From assembly GCF_000400465.1 (NCBI RefSeq), contig NW_008806275.1, positions 177,443 through 209,442 of the forward strand: DNA of 32,000 bases, in the 5' to 3' direction. A program made the position numbers and the translations under genes. Numbering within the stretch: position 1 is the first letter of the stretch; the number at the start of each line of letters is the position of its first letter. The notes beneath the pieces were generated by a model. It saw only the letters and a list, made by a program, of their open reading frames with translations, ran no database searches and had not been told where the DNA came from. Origin of the DNA: Wallemia ichthyophaga EXF-994 (Eukaryota; Fungi; Basidiomycota). Positions 1 to 14,013 of the stretch are shown here, piece by piece.

Positions 1-277
1 AACGGTTTTAATTGAGTTGATGTACTAAATGTGAATCCACAATTTACTTAGTGGCAATCAACCTGTTCTGCCTCTACGCCGGATCAGGAAGGACGTCAGT
101 GTCGCACATGTCAAACATGTCCAACAGTGAATAGGTGCGTAGGTGGCCAGGTGGCAACTACTGTGCTTCTTGCCTCCAATCAATCTACGATAACAAATTA
201 TATTAAAAGCTCTATAATACAATTGCTTATTCACATTGCTCTAGATACACTGAAAAACTCGGGATTAGTTGGTAAGT

Positions 278-2119
278 CTAGACGTTGCTGTCACCTGTCT
301 TGTTTTCGTTCTCTGGGTTATCCTGATTGTGCAAGTCTTGGACATTTGCATTCTCACTTTGGTTTGCACTTGCATTCGCATTCGCATTGGAATCGTCATT
401 TGCACCTGCACCTACACTCGCACCCACACTCCCACCTGCACTCAAATCAGCATCCATATTCGCATTCTTCTCTTCCTGCTCCAGCCTAATGCGAAGGGTG
501 CTACCCCAGTGCGAATCGATGACTCCCTTGCCCATAAACTTGACAAGCTGGCCGAAAATGACTGGTCCTATGATAGTGTTCCACGCCACAGCCCAGATAC
601 CGATCAAGTAAGTCTCTGTATCCATGACTGTGATGGCATTCGGCGAGCTAGCATTCGCTTGGGATGTTGTCAGACTGACTTGCAAGATCAAGACTCCTAT
701 CTCGCCCCTCGCCAACATGGCGCTTCCAAGCAGCAGACCTGCTACCCAGCTATCTTTGTTGGGTTTGCCCAATCCCCATTTAGTCTTTCTCTTCTTGTTT
801 TCCTCGTCGCCCACAACGACTGTCTCTTTGGAGACACAGTCGCGTATAGGGATCCATATCCCGACGAGCAGCTTACCGATAAGCATGAACACACTGTACA
901 CCAAACCCTGCCAGAATCTCTTGGCGGTGAAGAGATCGAGGAATGGTATGCAGTAACCGATAGACGCGAAGAAAATAGATGCAAAGTACCGTTTGAGGAG
1001 TGGTTCGAATATCTCCTCGAAAATGTGTTTGTAGTTTAGGACATCATCGCGGTTAGATGGCCAGACTACGAGCGTCATACCGGCTAAGAAGGCACCGAGA
1101 AGCATAGTGGTGTCCGTCTTAGCAGTGGTTCGATGATCTCTTCAAAGAGGTGTTTATAGTTGAGGACATCATCGCGGTTGGATGGCCATACTGCCAGCGT
1201 CATTCCAGCAAGGAAAGCACCGAGAAGCATAGTGGTGTGTATGTAGTAGCTGATGGCTAAGTAAGCGGCTAGGACGAGGAAGCCGACAGTAACGCCACCT
1301 CTATATCCACCATAGTGGGTGAGGGGGCGCTCAATCCAGCGTCTGTATACCGGTCTAAATGCGTATACGACGATGGGAGATACTATGGATAACGCGACAG
1401 ATGCAACGATGGGCTTGCCAACGATCCAACCCAGCGTGCTGTTTGAGCCACTGCCGAGAGATTGGATGACAGTGAGGAGGACGAGAGCGATAACATCGTC
1501 GCTGGGCGCTTATTAGTTTAACAATGAGCATAAAGAATCAACCCACCTCAATGCTACAGCAGTTAGCAAGGTACCAACCCTTGTCGCTTGAACGTTGATA
1601 CCTTTCTTAGTCTGACTCTGCAAAACGAAGAAAGTGGTTCCAAGGGAAGTTGATGACAGGGCACAGCCCGCGGTAAAGGCATGGATTATAGGATATCCGA
1701 AGGCTTTCCAGAGGATGGCGAAGGAGAAGGCTATGGGGAGAAGGACACCCCAGAAAGCAGCGACGAAGGCGATAGGGATGGCTCTGTGTGGGGAGTAAGT
1801 GAATATACAAAAAGCAACTCGCTACATACCTCACGAATACTTGAGCATCAAAGTCCAAACCACCCGAGAGGACGATGAGAATAAGACCGAGGTAGCCCAC
1901 AGTCAGCCAAGTCTCTTCCCATGATTCTGGTAAAATACCCGCGAGAGGACCACCGAAAATAATGCCCACAGCGATCTCACCAAGCAGACCAGCCGACAAG
2001 ACTAAATCGGCGATAATACGCGCGAGTTGCAAGCAAAAGTAGAAACCAAGAAGAACCAACAGAGGACCTGTTTGGACCATTGTTGGTTCTTCATAAGTAG
2101 TTATCGAATTTGAAGCCAT
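278..2119 (-). CDS. CPA2-type Na+(K+)/H+ antiporter (multi-exon; contains a frame-breaking internal duplication at 989-1238)
   Basis: Exon 1 ORF MASNSITTYEEP...GEIAVGIIFGGP...GYLGLILIV. GT-AG intron about 1784-1829 leads to ...ALSSTSLGTTFFVL; a second short intron near 1510-1546 leads to DDVIALVLL. Then LLGAFLAGM, IFFASIGYCIP and AMLARGEIG, all typical Na+/H+ exchanger TM motifs. Asn/Ala/acidic low-complexity C-tail. Confidence 0.88.
989..1238 (-). repeat. Two tandem diverged 125-bp coding repeats (989-1113 and 1114-1238) inside the antiporter
   Basis: Manual alignment shows 20 differences in 125 nt and 4 conservative aa changes (A/V, L/I, I/F, R/K). Both copies encode TTMLLGAFLAGMTLxVWPSNRDDVLNYKHxFEEIxEPLLxR. 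Confidence 0.95.
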
Positions 2120-2287
2120 AACATGTAGCGTGTGTTTTCGTGTGCCGTCGTCAACGTTGAGGAGGTTGGCGTGGTTGTGTAATTAAATTCAAAAATCCAA
2201 GGCTTCCCGCGTTGGATTTGGATAATTTGTGATGGACGTTGAGAAGAAAAGAAGCTCGACGTAGCCACAACAGAAGACTTCTTGGCA

Positions 2288-2347
2288 GGGGAGACTGTCG
2301 GGGATTCTGTCGGTTAGACTGTCAGGGAGAATGTCAGGGAAAATGTT
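2288..2347. repeat. Degenerate 12-bp x5 tandem array in the antiporter upstream region
   Basis: ggggagactgtc / ggggattctgtc / ggttagactgtc / agggagaatgtc / agggaaaatgtt, with an exact 12-nt period. Confidence 0.85.
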
Positions 2348-3013
2348 TCTTGGTACATTCCGCGGAATTACTGTGTGGTGCAGGGTGGCGATGATTCTGT
2401 CACGCCTGTCACGTGGAGTGTGTTATCGCGTTATCCATTCTGATGCATTTGGATAATGCAACTCAGTAGCGAGCTAGCGAGGTGATTAATATACGTCAAT
2501 CTGTTGAATCACAATGGATGGCGCGGATGATTATAATTTAAAATTCATGTTATTATACATCGCTAGTAGCCAGTATATGCATCGCATTATTCGCTACATA
2601 CACTCATTTATCTGTGGCACTGAAAGCCTTTGAATTTTTGCAACGCTCAAGTAAATTACAGTAAGAAAAGCATTAGAAAGCAGGCAAAGACGTAAAATAT
2701 AATAAACATGTATAGAATAGCATTCAACGTAAGCTAGCGGTCGATTCAGATTCAATTGCCGTCCCATTGATTGTAACAAGGTGGTTGGCTGGCCGGACGA
2801 CTCAAGACATTTAAGCAGCGCAGATCCGTTAGGATGCACAGCTTATTCATAGTCACTGCCAAAAGGTATCATCATTATCGAGCTTAGTTGGAAGGATAGA
2901 GAAGAAGGAGGTTTTGTCAGGGCTTTTATCCCCTATTGTAACCCTAGCGTTGAAAATTCTACATAATTGAGAAATGAGAAATGCATAAAGTAATGTGCTC
3001 CTCCAATTAAACA

Positions 3014-3500
3014 TCAATAAGGCATGCATATATAGTAACCGTCTCGATAATCATTGGTGGATAGGACCTCACATCTATCATCACTAGCCGAATTAATATC
3101 CTCATCCTTGTAGAGAATATGGTATCTGCGGTATAATAGTTTGTGAAGTGGTTTTCACCGATCTTAATGTAAGGAGAGTTAAGATCATCTCTAGTAGGAA
3201 GACCACGTATTGGTTGCACTGGTTAAATCGACAAGCAGAATGTCCGAATGGTCTAAGTCGCACCATGTATCGTCTTAACAATGTATTAAGATTTCATCAT
3301 CGTCATCATCAGCACTGGTTAAATCATAACAGATTTGTTAAGTCTTTACTTGGTGAGTATTGCTTTGTTTCCAAGTGTTTAGATGTTGTTGCTCCATGTG
3401 TCTCTGTCATCGCTGTCGGATTTGATTTTAGGGGAAAGCACCGCTTAATAATTAATATCAGTAGCCGTGCATGCAACGAACAAGTAGAAACAAATCGAGA
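3014..3500 (-). pseudogene. Degenerate paralogue of the adjacent secreted protein (frameshifts, stops, insertion); 5' limit uncertain
   Basis: Correcting two 1-nt deletions gives NQCNQYVGLPTRDDLNSPYIKIGENHFTNYYTADTIFxYKDEDINSASDDRCEVLS...ICMPY*. This aligns with NQCFQYVGLPPRDDLDSTPDIKIGLDHCRNLGSSDISLFYKDEEISVSNDDRCEPLS...RCILEA of 3620-4060. Confidence 0.8.
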
Positions 3501-3619
3501 GTTAAGACGGATCAATTTGGTTATTATGCCCTAATGAAACTTAATCATGAATATATCCACATAATCATAATATGCATTTCAAAGAAAGTACAAAATAACA
3601 TCCAAAAGACCATCACCAA

Positions 3620-4060
3620 TCAAGCTTCCAGAATGCATCTAAATCCGCCCTCATCATCACCAGAGAGAGGCTCGCATCTGTCATCATTAGACACGCTAAT
3701 TTCCTCATCTTTATAGAAAAGAGAGATATCGGAGCTTCCGAGGTTTCGGCAGTGGTCTAAACCGATTTTGATATCAGGAGTGCTATCAAGGTCATCTCTA
3801 GGAGGAAGACCAACGTATTGGAAGCATTGGTTACCTCTAACTATGAATTGGTTTTTAGGGGTAAAGTTGTCGGGGTAATGTTGCGTGTTCAGGCTGGTGT
3901 AGATGCTGTTATTGTATCCTTGATAGCTGTCGGTGGTGAGTGCCTTTTTGATGAGCAGGGAAAACGAGTTTTGGGGAACATCTCCGTAGGAGTCTGACCA
4001 GGCGAGGGTAGTTGTGATAGTGAGTGCGAGAGTGGCGAGGTTTGTGAGTGAGAGATGCAT
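3620..4060 (-). CDS. Small secreted orphan protein (146 aa, 4 Cys)
   Basis: Intact ORF from ATG at 4060; signal peptide MHLSLTNLATLALTITTTLA-W; a conserved paralogue lies next door; no family recognised. Confidence 0.8.
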   Translation of the reverse strand: MHLSLTNLATLALTITTTLAWSDSYGDVPQNSFSLLIKKALTTDSYQGYNNSIYTSLNTQHYPDNFTPKNQFIVRGNQCFQYVGLPPRDDLDSTPDIKIGLDHCRNLGSSDISLFYKDEEISVSNDDRCEPLSGDDEGGFRCILEA

Positions 4061-4181
4061 AATGCGTGTGCAGGTTGAAGAAGAAAACATCAGTTAAATA
4101 AGTAATCGGGATCAATCAGTAGCTGTGCAAATGCACCCGAGACATTTCGTAAAGAGGTATATTATATATTCAAGGAACAAA

Positions 4182-4689
4182 TCAAATAAGTCTGCGATCA
4201 GTCATAACTCTAACAATACTACCAGTTCCTGCAACCTGAGTGAGCTTCTCATGCCAGCTGAGGAAGACGTTTCCAGAGGAGTCAGCGATGGGGAGAGACA
4301 TAGACTTGTAAATGTATTTCATGAGATTGTCATGGTGGTGCGGTTGCAAGTCCTTCAAGGCCCCCTCAATATCGTTAGTTCTGGTGGAAGAAAGGATCTG
4401 TATGATTGAGTTGGTGTTGATCGATTTCGCAGAGTTTTGAGTTGGACCGAAGGGAGGGGAATCTAAGAGAAGCGCTAAGGCTTGAGAGGTTTGATGGCTG
4501 AGTGGGGTGTTATGAGTGAATAGGTGACAAGTGCTCGACTTACCTGTTCAAGAGACTTGTAGAGTGCGATTGGAGGGAGTTGAAGTGAGCTGTGGTTTCT
4601 TCAGGATTCCTATCATCAACCTCGGCCAGGTCTTGGTCATTGTAAAATTCATTTTCAATTGCGTCAATATCGATGTTTCTGAAGTTCAT
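4182..4689 (-). CDS. ARC15: Arp2/3 complex subunit 5 (ARPC5/p16-Arc)
   Basis: MNFRNIDIDAIENEF..., intron 4498-4543, then ...DNLMKYIYKSM...NVFLSWHEKLTQVAGTGSIVRVMTDRRLI*, the ARPC5 C-terminal signature. Confidence 0.93.
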
Positions 4690-4702
4690 TTGGTGGTTGA
4701 GA

Positions 4703-5048
4703 ATGAAGAAGGTGGGTAAGTGAGGATAGGAAGGGCATAGCACTTATATAGGAGTAGAATACAATAGATATCGGTGTAAGGGATGGGAAGAGTACTTTGT
4801 ATTTGGAATTGGAGAGGAGTACAAGTGTGGCTCAATTGAAGGATATTCTAAAGAATGAGATGAATAAACAAGGCTCAATGGACATCTACAAGATAACAAA
4901 GGAGATGGATTCAAATGACTCGGTTGAATATGAAATGATGGATGGTAGAATGTCACTCAACACACTCAACAACCTGGAATACCTTGTAATTGGATGGGAT
5001 AATCAAGCACCTGCAATAAACCTCCCTATATTCCATCAAGAAGAATGA
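4703..5048 (+). CDS. Putative small ubiquitin-fold protein, Elongin-B-like (start exon uncertain)
   Basis: Open frame 4758-5048 reads NTIDIGVRDGKSTLYLELERSTSVAQLKDILKNEM..., resembling Elongin B IRRHKTTIF...STVFELKRI. ATG 4703 could join through a GTGGGT..TAG intron at 4712-4757. Confidence 0.45.
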
Positions 5049-5054
5049 ATTTAT

Positions 5055-5456
5055 TTACAAAACTTGTTCTGTCTGCCAAACTGAGTTTGTTTGGAATTCG
5101 GCAGGTGCAGTTGGATTTGACTGGGATTTCAACAGCATTAGCTTGTAAAAATGTTTAATACTCAACTCACACTCTGTCCTCTATTGCTCCCAGTCAACCT
5201 CTCGTCCCTCCTCATCATTACTTGTTCAAATTGGTCTAAATTGTAGCGTGTGGGCTGTGAAATGGGTGTTAGATGTATTTTATATCCGACGCACAACCCA
5301 CCTTCATGTCATTCCTTGCAAACTTGACGCTGTTCATTCCAACGCTTACAACGCCGAACATGACTGTGATTAGGCCTTGGGGAGTGTTTGAAATGACTTA
5401 TACTGTATAGCAACACACCTACCAACTGGAATCAACGCTTCGAATGGAACTGGCAT
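5055..5456 (-). CDS. NDUFA1: NADH:ubiquinone oxidoreductase subunit NDUFA1 (MWFE/NIMM), 4 exons, absent from ORF track
   Basis: Introns 5376-5422, 5255-5301 and 5121-5170 give MPVPFEALIPVGLITVMFGVVSVGMNSVKFARNDMKPTRYNLDQFEQVMMRRDERLTGSNRGQSSNPTAPAEFQTNSVWQTEQVL*. MPVPFEAL and RDxRLTG are fungal NDUFA1 hallmarks. Confidence 0.92.
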
Positions 5457-5519
5457 CGTCGCTGCGGCTCTGTGTTGATGGTGTATATCCAACCACAACC
5501 ACAACCACCAACACCTCGA

Positions 5520-6950
5520 ATGCCTTCTTCCAAGCCATTTATATTCAACTCCTACTCACAGCGTAAGATTGCCTTGAAGTTCTCCTACTCTGGCTGGTCT
5601 TATAACGGTTTGGCTGCACAGTCTGTACCCACTCCACTCCCGACCGTTGAGCAGACGCTCTGGGATGCTTTGAGCAAGGGCAGGCTCGTTGACGCGTCCA
5701 AATCATTCGACTCCGCTGGCTGGAGCAGGTGCGGCAGGACTGATAAAGGTGTCTCATCCGCAGGTCAAGTTGTTGCTTTATGGGTCAGATCAGCGTACAC
5801 CCCCTACAACGCTCCACACGCTCCACACGCCATTGAAGCTTTCAAGCAACCCACCGCCGCTCGCCCTCCTTCCCTATCCAAGGCACAGCACGCGTCGATC
5901 GACAGTGCAGACGAGTCTGAGCGGGACAGTGTCCGCGAGCGTGTCTACAAAGAAGCTCACGAGGCCCAGATATTCAAAGAATCGCAACCACAAACCCACG
6001 AGCTCAACTACATCCAAATCCTCAACTCTCTCCTTCCCCCCTCCATTCGTATCCTGGGGTGGGCACCCGTGCACCCCGCCTTCGACGCCCGCTTCGACTG
6101 TCTTCGCCGTCACTACAAGTACTACGTGGATCCCGCCGCGTCTCCTCAAGGACCCGGTTTGGATGTTGGGCGAATGAACACCGCCCTCCAGCGCCTCAAA
6201 GGCACGCATGATTTCCGCAACTTCTGCAAAGTAGATGCGAGCAAGCAGATCAACAACTTCCACCGCACGATCCACGATGCGTGGATAGAGCGCGAGGAGA
6301 ACCTCAAACTCCACTGCGTCAATCTTGTCGGATCTGCCTTTCTCTACCACCAAGTGAGGTGTATGATGGCGGTGTTGTTTTTGGTCGGTTGCGGCAAAGA
6401 GGAGGTGAGCGTGGTGGATGATTTGATGCGCGTGGAGCTTGACCCTGAACACCCCCACCTCCCCACCGTTATTGGGAAGCCTATCTACGACATGGCACAC
6501 GATCTCCCCCTCTGTCTATACGACTGTGTTTACGACGACAGCAAGGTGGTGTGGCGCTCGGCGCCTTGTGGGAGCGAGAGCGAGAGTTTGCACTCAGATC
6601 AAGCAGACGCCATACTTCACCGCACTCACATAGCCAAATCACTCACCGATCAACTCTTCGACCTCGAACTCAAGTCGGCTATGGTGCGCAACGCCCTCAA
6701 ACACTTACACCCCACTCTCACCACTCCCATTGGGGACCGAAGCAATGCTACCCCGCTCGGCGGTAACACTTTCGCCATGTCCAAGGCTTCCCGCCCACTC
6801 CTTGAAAGAGAGAGGGGAAATACACCCGATGAAATAAACAGACGCTGGAGAGACAGCGAGAAGGGCAAGCGTAGACAGGGCAAGAAAGGCGGTGAACGTG
6901 TCGATGGCCATGTGACTGATAAGATGGATATCAGCGACGCAGATGAGTAA
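5520..6950 (+). CDS. PUS3: tRNA pseudouridine(38/39) synthase, TruA family
   Basis: RKIALKFSYSGWSYNGLAAQ, catalytic SRCGRTDKGVS, ARFDCLRRHYKY, GTHDFRNFCK, AFLYHQVRCMM. Confidence 0.93.
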   Translation: MPSSKPFIFNSYSQRKIALKFSYSGWSYNGLAAQSVPTPLPTVEQTLWDALSKGRLVDASKSFDSAGWSRCGRTDKGVSSAGQVVALWVRSAYTPYNAPHAPHAIEAFKQPTAARPPSLSKAQHASIDSADESERDSVRERVYKEAHEAQIFKESQPQTHELNYIQILNSLLPPSIRILGWAPVHPAFDARFDCLRRHYKYYVDPAASPQGPGLDVGRMNTALQRLKGTHDFRNFCKVDASKQINNFHRTIHDAWIEREENLKLHCVNLVGSAFLYHQVRCMMAVLFLVGCGKEEVSVVDDLMRVELDPEHPHLPTVIGKPIYDMAHDLPLCLYDCVYDDSKVVWRSAPCGSESESLHSDQADAILHRTHIAKSLTDQLFDLELKSAMVRNALKHLHPTLTTPIGDRSNATPLGGNTFAMSKASRPLLERERGNTPDEINRRWRDSEKGKRRQGKKGGERVDGHVTDKMDISDADE

Positions 6951-6976
6951 ATGAATGCATTAATAGATTGTATTGT

Positions 6977-7042
6977 TTATAGATTGTTTTTAGATTTCTT
7001 ATAGACTGCTTAAAGACTGCTTATAGACTGCTTAAAGACTAC
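6977..7042. repeat. 11-bp x6 minisatellite between convergent 3' ends
   Basis: ttatagattgt/ttttagatttc/ttatagactgc/ttaaagactgc/ttatagactgc/ttaaagactac. Confidence 0.9.
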
Positions 7043-7052
7043 CTCTTACACC

Positions 7053-8289
7053 CTACACACGCCCACAATACTGATCCATCCACGCAATAGCATCGTTAAC
7101 CACCTCTCTGCTCAGAGGGGTGGGTCTATCAGCCAGCATGACGTGATTGACATCATGCATAATTCTGAGAGACTTATCACCGCGAGTGTTATCCGCCCGT
7201 GCAACAAATTGTCTGCTAGCGTCGCACAAGGTGACACGATCCGCATCACCGTGGCAGATGCGCAGTGGTGTATTCAGCTTGGATACGTCCCTATTGATGC
7301 TCTCGACGCCACTCAGTAGTGCCAGTCCCGTACCGATACGCAGCGCTCCCTGGTAGACACGTATATCCGACAGCGTCTCCGCTATTACGCGCGCATCCTC
7401 CGTCTTCAATGAGCCGTCTGAACGAATCAGCGGGACGTGGCCAATAAGTGATGCGAGCATGCGCGCTACCGTCTCCACCACCCACGGTGGACGCGTCTCG
7501 GGCGATATGCCAAGCATCGGCGACAGCGCGTAGACGCCAGCCAAATGCGGTCGCTGGGGGGTCAAAAGTGAGTGTGAGTGTGAGTGCGAGTCACTTTCGC
7601 TTTTTCCCCCCTTCTGCGCCGGTGGGTACTGCAAAGCGTAATTGATAGCGAGAAAGCCTATACGGTATGACGTCAGAAATACGATGGCGCGCACACACGC
7701 CACACTCACCACCAAGAGAATGGCCCATCAGAAAGAGTTGCTTATTGGGAGGATAGATGTCCTCTACGACCGACGCTAGTGCGCGCGTGAGGATATTGCA
7801 CGACGGCACAAAGACATGCAGACCGGACGACCTCCCATGGCCTGGCAAATCAAGCGCCACAACGCGATAACCGCGCCGCACGAACTCCGCCGCATTCGCC
7901 ACCCACTTCCCCCCGTAATCCCCGTAGCCGTGGACGAGCAGCAGGTCAGCGTCGACGTCACCCGGCGCGCGGCGGGCTTTCTCGAACGTCTGGAATGTCA
8001 CCCAGCTGTCTTGATGTGAGAGGCGCGCTTCGTCGAGCTCACCCTGCGTAAGCGCTATCTCATGCGATCGTCCAAGCGCCTCGCCCATACGAGTCGTGTA
8101 GAGGCGGCGGCGAGTTGTCTTTATGTCGCTGTAGTGCGCCTGGTGCGATAGCTCGTATGTGTGGCTCGGAGGGAGTAGGTAACGCCCGTATGTTGGATCC
8201 AGCGGTCGAAATAGCCCCAGTCTCTCCAGTGGTGGCGCTAGAATCTCCCGTAGTGCTCGCAGGTATTGTAAATTCGGTGTCGGTCGCAT
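7053..8289 (-). CDS. Alpha/beta hydrolase, monoacylglycerol lipase/lysophospholipase-like (start uncertain)
   Basis: LLVHGYGDYG, DLPGHGRSSG, nucleophile GHSLGG spanning intron 7658-7709, ICHGDADRVT (Asp), VNHVML (His). Confidence 0.88.
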
Positions 8290-8502
8290 ACTCCACTCTG
8301 TTCGCCCACTTTGGCCAGTTTGCCCAAGGGAGAAGACGAGCAGAAGACAGAAAGCGGAAAGAAGAGCGTGGAGTTACAGTCATCCATTGTACAGCTCACC
8401 CAATTCATAGATTACCTCAACATTCTAATTAAAGTTGACGTGCATTCAATCGGTACCAATTCAATCGTCGACCGTCTTCTCGCTTCACCAGCACCATACG
8501 TC

Positions 8503-9589
8503 ATGACGAAATCGTGAGCAGACACACAGCCAGAGGGCCACACAGCCACACTCACACTCAATTTCACTCTCACACCCACTGCAGCTGGGTGACAGTAGTA
8601 ACGACGGCGAGCTATGTGAGTGCACCACCACGCCACCACGCCACCACGCCCCCTCACCTCACACACACCAGGCCATCGGCGCCAAAGTCCTCTCAGCGAG
8701 TCTGTCGCACTGCAAATCGCAATATCCTCTCCTCGTGCTCGCAACCGAAGCGCTCCCGGCCGACGCGCGTACGCAGCTGCTCGAATTCGGTCTAGAGGTG
8801 CGCACAGTCGAGCCACTCCTCCTCGACAGCGTGGCTGCAGGTGCAAATCGCGCTGCTTTTGCGGAGGCGGGCAACAAATTACGCGCATTCGCACTCACCG
8901 AGTTTGAGACATTGGGGCTGCTGGATGCGGACACGCTCGTGACGCAGAATATAGACCATTTACTGGCGCATGATACACACGGTGGCGTTGGTGTGGATGT
9001 GGATCAACTCGCAATCGCTTTCGCTTGCACTTGCAATAACCGCCGTAAACCATTCTATCCGCGTGAGTGGACGGTGGAGAATTGCGGTCATACACGGTTC
9101 TCGCAGACAGACACATACTCACATACACCCCCTTTCACTCACCTCTCCCGCCTCACTGCCACAAATGATGTCGCTCTCAACTCGGGCGTCATGGTCTTCC
9201 GGCCGAGTGACAAGGTGTGTGGGGATATCGAGCAGTTCGTGCGCACAAACAGGGAAACTGTGCAGAGCTACGTGTTTCCCGATCAGCAGATCCTGCAGGA
9301 TGTCTTCCAAGACAGAGTGCGTATCTTGCCGTGGTTCTACAACGCTCTCAAGGTGCTCAGAGTATGCCACAAGCCGCTGTGGGATAATGGCGCATCTAAC
9401 ACACGCGTGAACGTCGTCCATTACATTCACGAAAAACCTTGGAGTAGGCGGTGCGAATCGATAGCCTTTCCAAACAACCTCCCCGCTTGGGATGCAGATG
9501 CCGAGTTCCAAGTGGACCCCTCACACGCGTGGTGGTGGTGGGCTCATGATAACCTCCTCAGTCGCGAACATCAGTGGGTGGGTGAGTGA
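8503..9589 (+). CDS. Glycosyltransferase family 8 (glycogenin/galactinol-synthase-like)
   Basis: Introns 8514-8584 and 8616-8671 give MTKSWVTVVTTASYAIGAKVL...YPLLVL. Motifs KLRAFAL, DxD (LLDADTL), LNSGVMVFRPS, FPDQQIL, YNALK, VHYIHEKPW. Confidence 0.9.
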
Positions 9590-9676
9590 GTTGTATACAA
9601 GTAATAGATTTGAATGGATTGATATGAAAGGCTGATTAAGTAGAATATATTACATTTTACCCGATTCTCTTTATTT

Positions 9677-10852
9677 CTATCTGTCATACCTATCTTGCAC
9701 TTGATCACCATGATTAGCTGTACTGTTGTAAGTCTGAGACAATATTCGACTCTCATCCTCATGCAGCAACGGCTGCTGCTCGTCGCTGTACCCCGCATGG
9801 CTCGCGAGAAGGTATTGTGCTGGCGACAGGCCTATGCCTACTTTTGTGAGGGACGAATTAGATCTTGCACGGATTGGTTTAATGCATGTGGTGTGTGCGG
9901 GGTGTGATAAATCGCGTGAGTGCACCTGAACCTGTGCAGATTCTATAGAACACCTCCGTACACACCCACGCTCAAGCTCCTGCTGCTCGCTTTCTGGCGC
10001 TCTACAAAGGAAAAAGACGCCACAGAACGACACAACCAGTCCGAGAAGCAGTGTCGGGTACGGAAAGGAGTCGAGGTCGTTAAAGAGGACTGAGCTGGAG
10101 AATATGACGGATATTGTAAAGTAGATGTACTGCGTGGGTATGACTATCTTGGAGTGAAATCGATTGAGGGCCTTGTTCAAGAAATGCACCTGTGCAGCTG
10201 CTGTGAGGAGAAGCACTATCAACGCGACGTATGTTATCTGATGCGTGAATGCCCCAGCCACATCCTTAACGAGCAGTCCGCTGAGTGCCTTTGTGGAAAT
10301 AACTGTAAGACTCCCGAAGAGGGCGCATATTAGAATGTCCACGGTAACAGATCGCCGAGCAAAAGTGCTATTTGACAAAGCCATAAGAAGGAAAATGGCA
10401 GTGAACAGACAGAAAAGGTATGTTTGGAACCAAGGCCTGTTTATAGCTGTGATTAGGGTGTTGTAGTCGACGTTGTCCTCTCTGGCTGTGTTTGAAGAGA
10501 CAAGGATGAAAGCCCCAGTAATGCAGAGCATAGAGCCAGCTATCTCTTGCAATCCAAACGATTCTTGGAGGAGGATTGGCGAGAAGATTCCGTTCGCAAC
10601 CAATGCACAGCTGCCGAGAGGGGCGACTAGAGGTGCTGGGGAGAGGCCATATGCGATAAAGTTGCAGCACTCTCCTAAACTGGACATTGCCAAACCGACC
10701 CAGAAAGTACCGTTTCGTAGGTATTGCAAGGTGTCGTCATTTTCCTCTAAATTTGAAATTTGCAGGTGGCTGAGTTTCTGGATATTTAGACCCAGCGCTA
10801 TAACGACGTTGCCTGCGATGGCCGCTACAACTCCTGCCACATTTCCCTTCAT
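9677..10852 (-). CDS. NIPA-family (DUF803) Mg2+ transporter; start may lie further upstream
   Basis: GNVVIALGLNIQKLSH, YLRNGTFWVGL, GECCNFIAYGLSPAPLVAPLG, GSLTVISTKA, QVHFLNKALNRF. Confidence 0.9.
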   Translation of the reverse strand: MKGNVAGVVAAIAGNVVIALGLNIQKLSHLQISNLEENDDTLQYLRNGTFWVGLAMSSLGECCNFIAYGLSPAPLVAPLGSCALVANGIFSPILLQESFGLQEIAGSMLCITGAFILVSSNTAREDNVDYNTLITAINRPWFQTYLFCLFTAIFLLMALSNSTFARRSVTVDILICALFGSLTVISTKALSGLLVKDVAGAFTHQITYVALIVLLLTAAAQVHFLNKALNRFHSKIVIPTQYIYFTISVIFSSSVLFNDLDSFPYPTLLLGLVVSFCGVFFLCRAPESEQQELERGCVRRCSIESAQVQVHSRDLSHPAHTTCIKPIRARSNSSLTKVGIGLSPAQYLLASHAGYSDEQQPLLHEDESRILSQTYNSTANHGDQVQDRYDR

Positions 10853-11173
10853 ATCAGCGAAAGAGAAGGCATGTGAGTGGCGAGTGATTGGTGGGAGGGG
10901 TGCAGAAAATACAACGGCTACAGCGCACAGAGCATAGAGCACGCAAGTCACAGCACACTAGAAATGGCACACGATACTCATTACTCACCAAAATCACACG
11001 GACACCCGTACGAATACACCCGATAGCCGTTGCTCATGCTGATCACTCAACTACGCAGCGGAGTCCCGTGAATACGTTCGATCGGTGCGGCTGAATGATT
11101 TGGCGTGTTATCTGTATTCAATATTAAACTGTGTAACTCTTTCTATCGATTTGACCATCACAAAGCAAGCCAA

Positions 11174-12711
11174 ATGGATCCATACAACAAGCCAAAGGGA
11201 CCTTCACCACACTACTCCCTCTACCAGCGTGAGCTCTTTAAGAATGGCCCACAGGGAAAGCTGCCGAGTGTCAGCACGCATCCGTCAAAGTGCGTTTGGG
11301 TTGTACTGTGCGCAAGTAAATCCCAAGTATCTGACATTGTATAGGTTACAACACGACGCCCGCAACAATCTCACAAACAACGGCTATTGGTATGCAAGTT
11401 CAAGTAAGTGAACCACTATCGACGAATGACGACATGGATTAGCGCTTATCTAACACTAATTTTCCAGACGCTGGGATGGGATGGACGCATGTGAGTGCAA
11501 AATCTGGCAATCTTCTGAACCCGCTAACACTCCCCACTCAGCACGCCAACAGAGAAGCTTTCTTCAAGTATCGCATCATTCCTCGCACGCTTCAAGACAC
11601 CAACACACGTGACCTCACAACCACAGTATTCGGTCACAAAGTACCAGCCCCAATCCTATTTGCACCCATCGGTATAAATAAGATCTATCACCCCAAGGGT
11701 GAGCTAGCTGCCGCGACGGTAGCTGGCGAATTGGGGCTCCCCTACTGCCTCTCTACAGCTTCCAGCTACTCTATTGAAGATGTTGCAGCTGCGCACGACA
11801 AGTCGGCCGCAGTGAAGAATGAGTCCAACTCGGTCAACGAGTACAGCGGGAGCAAAAGAGAAACTGAATCCAACGCACCCCGTTTCTTCCAGCTTTACGC
11901 CAGCCAGGACCCTCAAGTTACTCAAAGCCTATTGCGTCGCGCGTGGCAGAATGGCTTTGATGCGTGCATGATTACCACCGACACCCCTCAACTCGGTTAT
12001 AGACCGACAGATACAGATATCGGCAACTACGCCTTCTACGCAGGTAACTTGGGCAACGAAATGGGTGAATCGGATCCAGTGTTCATGAGAAAGTACGGCG
12101 ATGAACTTAAGCACGACCCAGGTCGCTGGATCGACCATAGCGTTTGGCATGGAAAGCCGTTGACATGGCCAGCTGTAGAAGAGATCAGAAATTTCTGGCA
12201 CGAATTAACAAATGGCAGACCTTTCTTAGTAAAAGGTGTCCAATCTGTCGCAGATGCCGAAAAGGTGAAAAAGTCTCACAAAAAATTGTTTTCCTTTTAA
12301 CATCCAACTCAGGCTCTATCGATTGGCTGCGACGGGATAGTCGTGACAAATCACGCAGGACGCCAAGTTGATGGTGCTGTGGGGAGTCTCGAGGTGCTCC
12401 CAGAAATCGCAGCAGCCGTCGGGCACAAGTGCACAATACTTTTCGACTCTGGGATCAGAACGGGTAGCGATATCATGAAAGCGATGGCGTTAGGCGCACA
12501 CGCTGTCATGGTAGGTAGAATGTGGGTCTGGGGTTTGTCTACGGGAGAGCCTGGCTGCCGTCATGTGATCAAGTCGCTCCTCGCAGACTTGGACATAAGC
12601 ATGACTGTCGGTGGCTTCCAATCACTCAGCGACCTCAACCCGGACATTCTCAAACACGATCCTCACTCGACAATGCCCCCAGGGGCTGCTGAGCCATCTA
12701 TTTTGTATTAA
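11174..12711 (+). CDS. FMN-dependent alpha-hydroxyacid oxidase/dehydrogenase (lactate oxidase/2-monooxygenase-like)
   Basis: Introns 11290-11344, 11404-11467, 11491-11541, 12265-12312. Motifs WYASSNAG, FAPIG, FFQLY, DTPQLGYR, LVKGV, TNHAGRQVDG, DSGIRTGSDI, VGR. Confidence 0.92.
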
Positions 12712-12787
12712 GTGGGTGTTTTGCAGTTTCTGCTTTAGCTCAAATTCTGCGCAACTTTTCATGCTTGCTGTTTGCCCTGTCACCTCC

Positions 12788-14013
12788 ATGACTGAACACA
12801 ATTTACTATTCTACGCTTATGCCGCACTCGGCGCGCAGGCAGTAGGCAGTGTGTACGCTGGTAGCTGGGGAGCGTTGAAAGTGGGTGTCCGTCCACGCAA
12901 ATACACCCGCTTACAAGGTCACAGACACCGAAAGCGACAAAGAAGCTGATTAGAGAGAGCAAGGGTGAATTAGAAGACGATGAAGACGAAAAGGATGAAG
13001 ATGTCTCCGAGAAGCTCAACGCTGGGGATGCAAAGATGTTCCCAATCATCGGCAGCGCTGTGCTTGGATCACTCTTCCTTATTGTCAAATACGTTAGCAA
13101 GGAGTATCTAAATATTCTCCTCGGTGGTTACTTTGCCCTCTTTGGCGGTTTTGCTGGTGCTAAATACCTCGACAGCGGTTTCTACCACGTCATCGGATCT
13201 AAGCTCTACAATACTCTCTTTCCCAAATGGAGACTCCTTCTTGTTAAAGGCAAGAGCGAAGAAGCTCGCTTCCCTTTCACTGCCTCCTCAATAGCCTTCC
13301 TTCTCCTTTCACTTGCAGCTTCGTTTTCATACCTCCTGTTCGACAGACCATGGTATCTCAACAACTTCCTCGGCCTTTCCTTCGCTTGGACCGGCATCAA
13401 ACTGATTGAGCTCGATAGCTTGAAAACAGGCGCTATCCTCCTCTCCGGTCTCTTCTTCTACGACGTGTTCTGGGTCTTCTTCACTCCAGTCATGGTTTCA
13501 GTAGCTAAAGGCATAGAAGCTCCTATCAAGCTCGTCTGGCCTAAGGATGCTGGTATAGCTTTCGTTGCTGACTTGGCCAAGAAAGTAGGACATGAGTGTG
13601 CATGTCTCAACAAACTAGTCTCAGATGAAAACCCCGGTTTGACATTGCTCGGTTTGGGTGATATAGTCTTACCCGGTATCTTTATCGCTTTGTGTCTCAG
13701 ATTGGATCTGCATTTGGCAACTGTAAGACACTCAGAGCAGAAAAAATCAGGTCTACCTCCAACATCAAACGACAAATTCGCAAAACCTTACTTCACGACC
13801 TGTTTGATAGCTTACTTTTTGGGTTTGGTGGCCACTGTCGTCGTCATGCACAACTTCAAAGCTGCTCAACCTGCTCTGCTATACCTCAGTCCAGCATGTA
13901 TTGGCTCAGTCGCGCTTTTGTCTGCTGCACGTGGAGAGTTTAAACAGGCTTGGAGTTGGACAGCCGAAGATGACCAAGAAAAAGACAAAGCGGATGACAA
14001 GAAAAGTGAATAA
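12788..14013 (+). CDS. Signal peptide peptidase (GxGD intramembrane aspartyl protease, A22B)
   Basis: Intron 12881-12924 gives ...GALKTPK...; catalytic YDVFW and LGLGDIVLPG; QPALLYL motif; probable in-frame intron 13553-13624. Confidence 0.93.

What the first reader, a model, noticed from the sequence alone, without database searches (positions are those of the whole stretch)
989..1238. Frame-breaking 125-bp duplication in the antiporter whose two copies diverged as coding sequence
Seen: two adjacent 125-nt copies spanning the LGAFLAGM helix, with 20 nt differences but only 4 conservative aa changes in about 41 codons. A length of 125 is one short of 126, so straight read-through shifts frame. 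Inference: mostly synonymous divergence means both copies spent a long time under purifying selection, so this is not a recent slippage event. It looks like a junction between two diverged paralogues or alleles (unequal crossover chimera) or an assembly join. Removing a cryptic 74-nt GTATGG...CTAAG intron (1118-1191, minus strand) would restore the frame and add 17 aa, which would be intronisation rescuing the gene.
Basis: partly seen in the sequence, partly recalled or inferred. Interest (0 to 1): 0.7.

Follow-up and report, generated by a model that had tools for sequence, protein, structure and literature searches.

The report
Misassembled paralogue fragment in antiporter gene
The "duplicated" 125 bases are a piece of the neighbouring sister gene placed into this salt-loving fungus's antiporter gene, almost certainly by the 2013 short-read assembly and not by evolution, so the frameshift and its "rescue intron" are very probably not real.

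Summary
Window 989-1113 and 1114-1238 are two adjacent 125-nt copies with 20 nt differences, 4 conservative aa changes and dN/dS 0.06. Read-through hits a TAG at 1084-1086.

The interpretation mostly fails. The window is the Wallemia ichthyophaga EXF-994 reference assembly (SOAPdenovo, K=21). The gene is a CPA2 cation/H+ antiporter, J056_002047.
- Copy B is 125/125 identical to this gene in other strains.
- Copy A is 124/125 identical to the tandem paralogue J056_002046, which lies 2172 bp downstream.
- The divergence therefore arose between two working genes, not in place.

No other sequenced strain with a full-length model has the insert, including one with no SNP for 8.8 kb around it. The insert equals the stretch between the first two blocks of at least 21 nt that the paralogues share, plus 22 nt. 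That is a K=21 graph bubble arm. The contig ends 988 nt away at a 163-N gap that removes the paralogue's 5' half.

The annotated protein bridges the frameshift with a 50-nt GeneMark intron (1167-1118).

Best explanation: false duplication from misassembly (about 0.9). Rival: a private templated insertion in EXF-994 (about 0.08). Reads or a PCR would decide.

The parts
278..2119 (-). Gene1: CPA2-type cation/H+ antiporter, annotated J056_002047 / EOR03969.1 in W. ichthyophaga EXF-994. In this assembly it is 1842 nt; in other strains it is 1717 nt.
   Evidence: Pfam PF00999 on both pieces, E 7e-26 and 3e-8. 100% match to P0001. Gene length in L001/L002. Annotated model reproduced exactly.
1784..1829 (-). 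Genuine intron 1 (46 nt, GTATGT...CACAG)
   Evidence: Removing it reproduces the database proteins P0001 and P0189 exactly.
1502..1546 (-). Genuine intron 2 (45 nt, GTGGGT...CCCAG; a CTAAT branch-like motif lies 16-12 nt before the 3' end)
   Evidence: Removing it reproduces P0001 and P0189 exactly.
1114..1238 (-). Copy B: the gene's own segment, encoding HTTMLLGAFLAGMTLAVWPSNRDDVLNYKHLFEEIIEPLLRR
   Evidence: 125/125 identical to gene1 in L001, L002 and L003/L004.
989..1113 (-). Copy A: the extra 125 nt. It is sequence of the downstream tandem paralogue (gene2, J056_002046) placed in register.
   Evidence: 124/125 identical to gene2 in L001-L004 and to EXF-994's own gene2 (L005 7993-8117), but only 105/125 to gene1.
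1113..1114 (-). Illegitimate junction ...CTAAGACGG|ACACCACT..., joining homologous column 275 to column 151 with no microhomology
   Evidence: Three-way alignment. The 20 21-mers across it are absent from L004.
989..993 (-). Switch zone from paralogue-type back to gene1-type. Position 993 is the last gene2-specific base; position 989 carries gene1's G where gene2 has C.
   Evidence: The 17 21-mers at 973-1009 are found in neither paralogue.
1217..1290 (-). 74-nt block identical between the two paralogues (columns 99-172). Its last 22 nt recur at 1092-1113 as the start of copy A.
   Evidence: Shared 21-mer blocks in L004; alignment.
951..988 (-). 38-nt block identical between the paralogues (columns 276-313), immediately after the insert
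1084..1086 (-). Premature TAG reached by straight read-through from ATG 2119
1118..1167 (-). 50-nt 'intron' of the reference annotation (GTCCTC...CTAAG). It bridges the frameshift and gives a 553-aa protein with a 25-aa repeat of the LGAFLAGM helix.
   Evidence: Splicing 1829-1784, 1546-1502 and 1167-1118 from ATG 2080 reproduces P0189 exactly. Genes were predicted with GeneMark-ES (PMC3849046).
1118..1191 (-).
   Evidence: It is frame-restoring (558 aa), but so are 130 other GT/GC..AG pairs nearby. It is exonic and conserved in all other strains.
1..5 (.). Contig end abutting a 163-N scaffold gap of KE007225.1, with a base mismatch at position 5
   Evidence: Window position 1 = L005 7702; Ns at L005 7703-7865. 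Mismatch at position 5.

Best explanation
The extra 125 nt (window 989-1113) is most likely a false duplication created when the EXF-994 reference genome was assembled.

**Shown**
- W. ichthyophaga carries two tandem antiporter paralogues 2172 bp apart.
- They are about 75-80% identical over most of their length. They are nearly identical around the LGAFLAGM helix.
- At K=21 they share k-mers only in four blocks. The first two (74 nt and 38 nt) flank a 103-nt divergent stretch.

**Inferred**
- In a K=21 de Bruijn graph this stretch forms a two-armed bubble.
- During scaffolding or gap filling the paralogue's arm was laid down next to the gene's own arm. This gave: shared block, gene2 arm, gene1 arm, shared block.
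- The real gene is then expected to be the intact 541-aa form seen in every other strain with a full-length model.
- The frameshift, the premature stop and the annotated 50-nt intron would be consequences of the error.
For: 1. **Origin of the copies.** Copy B is 125/125 identical to gene1 and copy A 124/125 to gene2, including EXF-994's own gene2. Neither copy has changed since the join.
2. **Source assembly.** The window is EXF-994 scaffold KE007225.1. It was assembled from HiSeq reads (500-bp and 2000-bp libraries) with SOAPdenovo 1.04 at K=21 (PMC3849046).
3. **Graph match.** The paralogues share stretches of at least 21 nt only at columns 99-172, 276-313, 315-373 and 378-415. The only illegitimate junction joins column 275, the last paralogue-discriminating base before a shared block. 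It joins it to column 151, 22 nt before the first discriminating base. The insert therefore equals the 124-nt K=21 graph edge plus 1 nt.
4. **Nearby assembly failure.** The contig ends 988 nt away at a 163-N gap. The gap replaces about 932 nt, including the 5' half of the donor paralogue, and there is a base error 5 nt from the contig end. The reference models gene2 as only 265 aa, against 518 aa elsewhere.
5. **Other strains.** All full-length models from other strains (541, 545, 528 and 532 aa; at least 15 contigs) lack the insert. These were assembled from PE150 reads at over 200x coverage with k up to 120. L004 has no SNP against the window from 1114 to 9885 and still lacks the insert.
6. 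**Independent breakpoint.** Another strain's assembly breaks its gene2 contig exactly at the start of the 74-nt shared block, and its gene1 contig 45 nt upstream of it (L006, L007).
7. **Known artefact class.** False duplications near gaps, including exons of one gene inserted into a neighbouring gene, are documented (PMC2864568, PMC9516828).
Against: - No EXF-994 reads could be examined, so the junction was not tested directly.
- Absence in other strains is equally expected for a mutation private to EXF-994.
- The last base of copy A (window 989) is gene1's G, not gene2's C. As a result 17 21-mers exist in neither paralogue. A pure graph walk cannot produce these, so a read-based gap-fill or base-correction step has to be assumed. 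The paper mentions no such step.
- The shared flank retained is 22 nt, not 21.
- My account of how SOAPdenovo prints and abuts contigs rests on memory and was not tested.
Confidence: 0.9

Rival explanations
1. A real mutation private to strain EXF-994. A double-strand break occurred in gene1 next to the 38-nt shared block. The downstream end invaded the neighbouring paralogue and copied about 124 nt of it. The new strand was then joined bluntly to the upstream end (ectopic synthesis-dependent repair plus end joining). This would pseudogenise one of the two antiporter paralogues.
For: - A donor lies 2.2 kb away, with near-identical tracts that could support strand invasion.
- The paralogue-to-gene1 switch sits right at the edge of an identity block, which homology-driven invasion also predicts.
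- The 17 chimeric 21-mers are natural if the sequence is really present in reads.
- The sequence is in the deposited reference.
Against: - Simple versions of the model predict gene2's C at window 989. G is observed, so a 4-nt fill-in or a mismatch correction must be added.
- The other junction has no microhomology.
- Nothing in this model explains why the copied tract ends 22 nt (K+1) into the shared block, or why the break sits exactly at a K=21 node boundary.
- The locus is demonstrably misassembled 1 kb away.
- The insert is absent from the nearest relative, and there is no post-event divergence.
- The prior for such a complex event in one given gene is very low.
Confidence: 0.08
2. An old in-place tandem duplication whose two copies were both kept under selection. 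Candidates are mutually exclusive alternative coding segments, or a gene rescued by a newly evolved intron.
For: - Low dN/dS between the copies (0.064).
- Frame-restoring GT..AG intervals exist, and one of them is used in the reference annotation.
Against: - Copy A is the paralogue's sequence, not a diverged descendant of copy B.
- The duplication is absent from all other strains and from W. mellicola and another Wallemia species.
- There is no intron between the copies.
- 131 chance frame-restoring intervals exist.
- The shared AAG acceptor has its only CTAA motif overlapping the acceptor itself, whereas the two real introns have a branch-like motif ending 11-12 nt before a CAG.
- The spliced products insert 17 or 25 residues that repeat one transmembrane helix containing invariant residues.
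Confidence: 0.01
3. An unequal crossover or gene-conversion chimera between the two paralogues.
For: The paralogues are tandem and share near-identical tracts that look like past gene conversion.
Against: - Unequal crossover yields a fusion gene or a triplication, not a 125-nt in-register insertion flanked on both sides by gene1.
- Gene conversion replaces sequence and does not add it.
- The 3' part of gene2 is still in place downstream.
Confidence: 0.01

Closest known systems
False duplications from genome misassembly (Kelley & Salzberg 2010, PMC2864568; Ko et al. 2022, PMC9516828, including 'false exon gain' and exons of one gene inserted into a neighbouring gene)
   Same: - Two diverged versions of one homologous stretch are laid side by side in a scaffold.
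- An assembly gap and contig-end errors lie nearby.
- The duplication is absent from better assemblies.
- It produces a wrong gene model.
   Different: - The classic cases involve two haplotypes of a diploid. Here the genome is treated as haploid, and the second version comes from a tandem paralogue 2.2 kb away.
- The copies abut with no N between them.
- The read-depth and read-pair criteria could not be checked.
Templated insertion at a repaired double-strand break (ectopic synthesis-dependent strand annealing followed by end joining); named from general knowledge
   Same: A short stretch copied from a nearby homologous donor, with one homologous junction and one non-homologous junction.
   Different: - There is no microhomology at the junction.
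- A one-base mosaic at window 989 is not predicted.
- The boundaries coincide with the assembler's K=21 graph nodes.
- There is no read evidence.
CPA2 cation/proton antiporters (Pfam PF00999; Thermus thermophilus NapA, PDB 4bwz and 5bz2)
   Same: - The host gene matches PF00999 above the gathering score.
- It keeps the invariant DD pair (D177, D178) and the LGAFLAG motif.
- A profile of the family hits NapA at E 1e-23 over nearly its full length.
   Different: - It is a fungal protein of about 541 aa with a low-complexity acidic, Asn-rich tail.
- Ion specificity and cellular location are untested.
- It is present as a tandem pair only in the W. ichthyophaga lineage.

Membership tests
False duplication by misassembly | Two in-register copies adjacent on one scaffold | tested here: met
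   989-1113 and 1114-1238, period 125, no indels.
False duplication by misassembly | Each copy equals a distinct real sequence (haplotype or paralogue) that elsewhere occurs once at its own locus | tested here: met
   Copy B 125/125 to gene1. Copy A 124/125 to gene2, including EXF-994's own gene2.
False duplication by misassembly | Assembly gap or contig-end errors close by | tested here: met
   A 163-N gap starts 988 nt away and replaces about 932 nt of the donor paralogue. There is a mismatch 5 nt from the contig end.
False duplication by misassembly | Boundaries coincide with repeat nodes of the assembler's k-mer graph | tested here: met
   The junction joins column 275 to column 151. The insert equals the 124-nt edge between shared 21-mer blocks, plus 1 nt. 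K=21 is stated in PMC3849046.
False duplication by misassembly | Absent from independent, better assemblies | tested here: inconclusive
   It is absent from at least 15 contigs of other strains, including one with no SNP for 8.8 kb. No second assembly of EXF-994 itself was available.
False duplication by misassembly | No reads span the junction; depth or read-pair anomalies | not testable with these tools
   No raw reads were available. No read-derived (Logan) contig carrying this gene was found.
In-place tandem duplication that diverged as coding sequence | Copy-to-copy differences arose after the duplication at this locus | tested here: not met
   All 20 differences are pre-existing gene1/gene2 differences.
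In-place tandem duplication that diverged as coding sequence | An old event is shared by related strains | tested here: not met
   The segment is single-copy in all other strains' full-length models and in two other Wallemia species.
Spliceosomal intron (intronisation rescue) | GT...AG borders that keep the frame open | tested here: met
   True for 1191-1118 and 1167-1118, but also for 129 other intervals.
Spliceosomal intron (intronisation rescue) | Branch site and acceptor context like the gene's real introns | tested here: not met
   The real introns have CTTAC or CTAAT ending 11-12 nt before a CAG. The candidates end in AAG, and their only CTAA motif overlaps the acceptor. This is a comparison by eye with two introns only.
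Spliceosomal intron (intronisation rescue) | The interval is not constrained coding sequence in relatives | tested here: not met
   The same bases encode the conserved VLNYKHLFEEIIEPLLR in other strains.
Spliceosomal intron (intronisation rescue) | Spliced transcripts exist | not testable with these tools
Mutually exclusive duplicated exons | Copies are separate exons with introns between them, conserved in relatives | tested here: not met
   The copies abut directly and the second copy is absent from relatives.
CPA2 cation/proton antiporter (host gene) | Na_H_Exchanger domain above the curated cut-off | tested here: met
   91.3 and 33.5 bits against a cut-off of 26.2.
CPA2 cation/proton antiporter (host gene) | Conserved Asp-Asp ion-binding pair and full-length similarity to a solved CPA2 structure | tested here: met
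   D177 and D178 are invariant in 19 homologues. NapA 5bz2 is hit at E 1.4e-23 over profile positions 14-441. That these two residues are the ion-binding pair comes from general knowledge.
CPA2 cation/proton antiporter (host gene) | Cation/H+ exchange activity | not testable with these tools
   Needs a transport assay.

The most novel reading that the evidence does not exclude
The insert is really present in the EXF-994 type strain. It would be a very recent, private templated insertion, copied from the adjacent paralogue during break repair. It would inactivate one of the two lineage-specific CPA2 antiporter genes of the most halophilic fungus known. The join would still be unchanged, and both parental sequences are known.
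Probability: 0.08. Interest if true: 0.35.

Novelty: not a real feature. Interest (0 to 1): 0.07.

Why it matters
The main value is as a correction.
- The reference protein J056_002047 (EOR03969.1 / XP_009266186.1, 553 aa) very probably carries a spurious 25-aa repeat of a core transmembrane helix.
- Its neighbour J056_002046 is truncated to 265 aa by a scaffold gap.
- Both entries are in UniRef. The EXF-994 proteome was used as evidence to annotate the 21 population genomes.
- Transporter counts and models for this halophile should use the 541-aa and 518-aa forms seen in the other strains.

The case also shows how a paralogue fragment placed by an assembler can look like an ancient duplication under selection, with a gene predictor adding an intron to bridge it.

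If the insert were real, it would be a clean natural example of templated insertion. That would still be of modest interest.

Tried and rejected
- **Read-derived contigs.** I looked up the post-junction ORF (window 278-1105) and the intact-type ORF (L004 12861-13688) in the contig collection. Neither is on record, so there is no read-level evidence either way.
- **Neighbouring gene.** A look-up of the 156-aa neighbour returned only a related strain. The source scaffold was reached through cluster members instead.
- **Solved structures.** A single-sequence search found nothing. A 19-sequence profile found NapA.
- **Mutually exclusive exons, programmed frameshifting, allelic or hybrid origin.** I rejected these because copy A is the neighbouring paralogue's sequence, the insert is absent from all other strains, and the species is analysed as haploid (PMC6738226).
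- **Unequal crossover.** I rejected this because both flanks are gene1.
- **Strain identity of GCA_004918415.1.** I could not match it to a strain number from the population paper.
- **Exact SOAPdenovo steps.** I could not reproduce the steps that would give the +1 base and the G at window 989.

Full report
**1. Observation.** Tandem Repeats Finder finds one array at 999-1238, period 125, 1.9 copies, 85% matches and no indels. The best register is 989-1113 (copy A) and 1114-1238 (copy B), with 105/125 identities. This is the only large tandem duplication in the window. On the minus strand both copies encode the TTMLLGAFLAGMTL.VWPSNRDDVLNYKH.FEEI.EPLL.R segment. They differ at 20 nt, 15 of them third codon positions, and at 4 conservative residues (A/V, L/I, I/F, R/K). 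dS is 0.86, dN 0.055 and dN/dS 0.064. Because 125 = 3x41+2, the frame from ATG 2119 shifts and ends at TAG 1084-1086. ORF 278-1105 then carries the rest of the protein.

**2. The gene and the organism.**
- The gene lies on the minus strand at 2119-278. It has two short introns, 1829-1784 and 1546-1502.
- Both protein pieces match Pfam Na_H_Exchanger PF00999.
- The N-terminal piece is 100% identical to a 541-aa Wallemia ichthyophaga protein, P0001. P0001 runs straight from ...EEIIEPLLRR into YFASIFF..., so it contains copy B only.
- A profile of 19 homologues hits the CPA2 antiporter NapA at E 1e-23. The DD pair and the LGAFLAG motif are invariant in those homologues.

**3. Where the two copies come from.**
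- In three other W. ichthyophaga assemblies the gene is 1717 nt, against 1842 nt here. About 500 nt downstream lies a 518-aa tandem paralogue, P0003.
- Copy B is 125/125 identical to gene1 in those strains. Copy A is 124/125 identical to the homologous segment of the paralogue and only 105/125 to gene1.
- A column-by-column alignment shows that all 20 copy-to-copy differences are the standing gene1/gene2 differences.
- The only base where copy A departs from gene2 is its last one (window 989). There it carries gene1's G.
- On both sides of the insert the window is gene1. Positions 6-988 and 1114-9885 are identical to strain L004 apart from a 16-nt indel in a 22-nt tandem repeat at 6987.
- The purifying-selection signature is therefore real, but it was acquired in two separate functional genes. 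The join has no measurable age.

**4. Source of the window.**
- Cluster members of P0001 include J056_002047 from the reference strain EXF-994, at 553 aa. Cluster members of P0003 include J056_002046 from EXF-994, at only 265 aa and starting at MLLGAFLAGM.
- Splicing the window at 1829-1784, 1546-1502 and 1167-1118, starting from ATG 2080, reproduces J056_002047 exactly. The window is therefore the EXF-994 reference assembly, scaffold KE007225.1.
- The gene predictor (GeneMark-ES, per PMC3849046) bridged the frameshift with a 50-nt "intron". The resulting protein repeats 25 residues: TDTTMLLGAFLAGMTLVVWPSNRDD.
- Window position 1 abuts a run of 163 Ns. In strain L004 the same interval is about 932 nt and holds the intergenic spacer and the 5' half of gene2. 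This explains the truncated 265-aa model.
- The contig also has a base mismatch 5 nt from that end.

**5. Why misassembly is the best explanation.**
- The reference was assembled from HiSeq 2000 reads (500-bp and 2000-bp libraries) with SOAPdenovo 1.04 at K=21.
- Over most of their length the paralogues are about 75-80% identical. Around this segment they reach 90-100%.
- Stretches of at least 21 nt are shared only at alignment columns 99-172 (74 nt), 276-313, 315-373 and 378-415.
- The 103 divergent columns 173-275 are therefore a two-armed bubble in a K=21 graph. Each arm is a 124-nt edge (123 unique 21-mers).
- The single illegitimate junction in the window joins column 275 to column 151. 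Column 275 is the last base that distinguishes the paralogues before a shared block. Column 151 lies 22 nt before the first distinguishing base.
- In scaffold orientation the sequence reads: shared block, gene2 arm (124 nt), one base, gene1 arm, shared block. This is what abutting two graph edges gives. For a biological break the positions would be arbitrary.
- An independent assembly of another strain breaks its gene2 contig exactly at the start of the 74-nt shared block (column 99). Its gene1 contig starts 45 nt upstream, at column 54.
- All other full-length strain models (541, 545, 528 and 532 aa; at least 15 contigs) lack the insert. Those genomes were assembled from PE150 reads at over 200x coverage with k up to 120 (PMC6738226).
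- False duplications near gaps, including exons of one gene inserted into its neighbour, are a documented class of error (PMC2864568, PMC9516828).

**6. The rescue intron.**
- Within about 550 nt around the junction, 131 GT/GC..AG intervals restore an open frame. The 74-nt interval is one of them and the annotated 50-nt interval is another. Both use the same AAG acceptor.
- That acceptor has no separate branch-site motif. The gene's two genuine introns have CTTAC or CTAAT ending 11-12 nt before a CAG.
- The same nucleotides are in-frame, conserved coding sequence in every strain without the insert.
- Either splice would insert 17 or 25 residues that repeat one transmembrane helix. I infer that this would disturb the membrane topology of everything downstream.

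**7. What remains open.**
- A real insertion private to EXF-994, made by copying from the paralogue during break repair and then end joining, cannot be excluded without reads.
- Two details fit the simple graph model imperfectly. The G at window 989 creates 17 21-mers found in neither paralogue. The shared flank retained is 22 nt, not 21.
- The first detail needs a read-based gap-fill or base-correction step that the paper does not mention. My picture of SOAPdenovo's contig output comes from memory.
- The repair model has its own problems. It predicts C at 989 unless extra steps are added. It has no microhomology at the junction. It does not explain the coincidence with K=21 boundaries.
- I put misassembly at about 0.9 and a real private insertion at about 0.08.

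**8. Verdict.**
- The feature is most likely not real, so its interest is low. The practical outcome is that two reference gene models, J056_002047 and J056_002046, should be treated as erroneous.

Noticed in passing
window 1-5 and beyond the left end (L005 7703-7865): The window starts at a 163-N scaffold gap of the EXF-994 reference. The gap stands for about 932 nt in a near-identical strain and removes the 5' half of the paralogue J056_002046. That gene is annotated at 265 aa, against 518 aa in other strains. Position 5 differs from the relative, as expected for a contig-end error.
   Followed up: yes
window 278-2119 plus the downstream paralogue (L004 12011-15830); L008; L009: The tandem pair of CPA2 antiporter genes appears specific to the W. 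ichthyophaga lineage. The syntenic locus in W. mellicola and in another Wallemia species (a Logan contig) has one gene. The two W. ichthyophaga copies are sisters in a protein tree (support 96/96).
   Followed up: partly
window about 849-1420 (L004 12719-13117 in gene1 coordinates): The paralogues are about 75-80% identical over most of the coding sequence but 90-100% identical in two tracts flanking the LGAFLAGM segment. This suggests past gene conversion between them, or unusually strong constraint.
   Followed up: partly
window 372-443 and the C-terminal tail of the gene (about 278-480): The tail is low-complexity, rich in Asn, Ala, Gly and Ser, with hexamer and 12-mer repeats. Strains differ by a 4-aa AGGS repeat unit (541 vs 545 aa, 528 vs 532 aa). 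Annotations also disagree on the start codon (M1 at 2119 or M14 at 2080).
   Followed up: partly
window 6977-7040: A 22-nt tandem repeat (2.9 copies) is the site of a 16-nt length difference from the near-identical strain L004. It could be either a real repeat-number polymorphism or another assembly collapse.
   Followed up: no
window 9886-13893: All 13 substitutions against strain L004 fall in this stretch, and 7 of them lie within 11289-11503. The stretch 1114-9885 has none. This is a patchy SNP distribution between two closely related strains.
   Followed up: no
window 3620-4090 (minus strand): A 156-aa ORF with no Pfam match is annotated at 156 aa in the population genomes but at 146 aa in the reference. 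This is another difference in gene models between the annotations.
   Followed up: no
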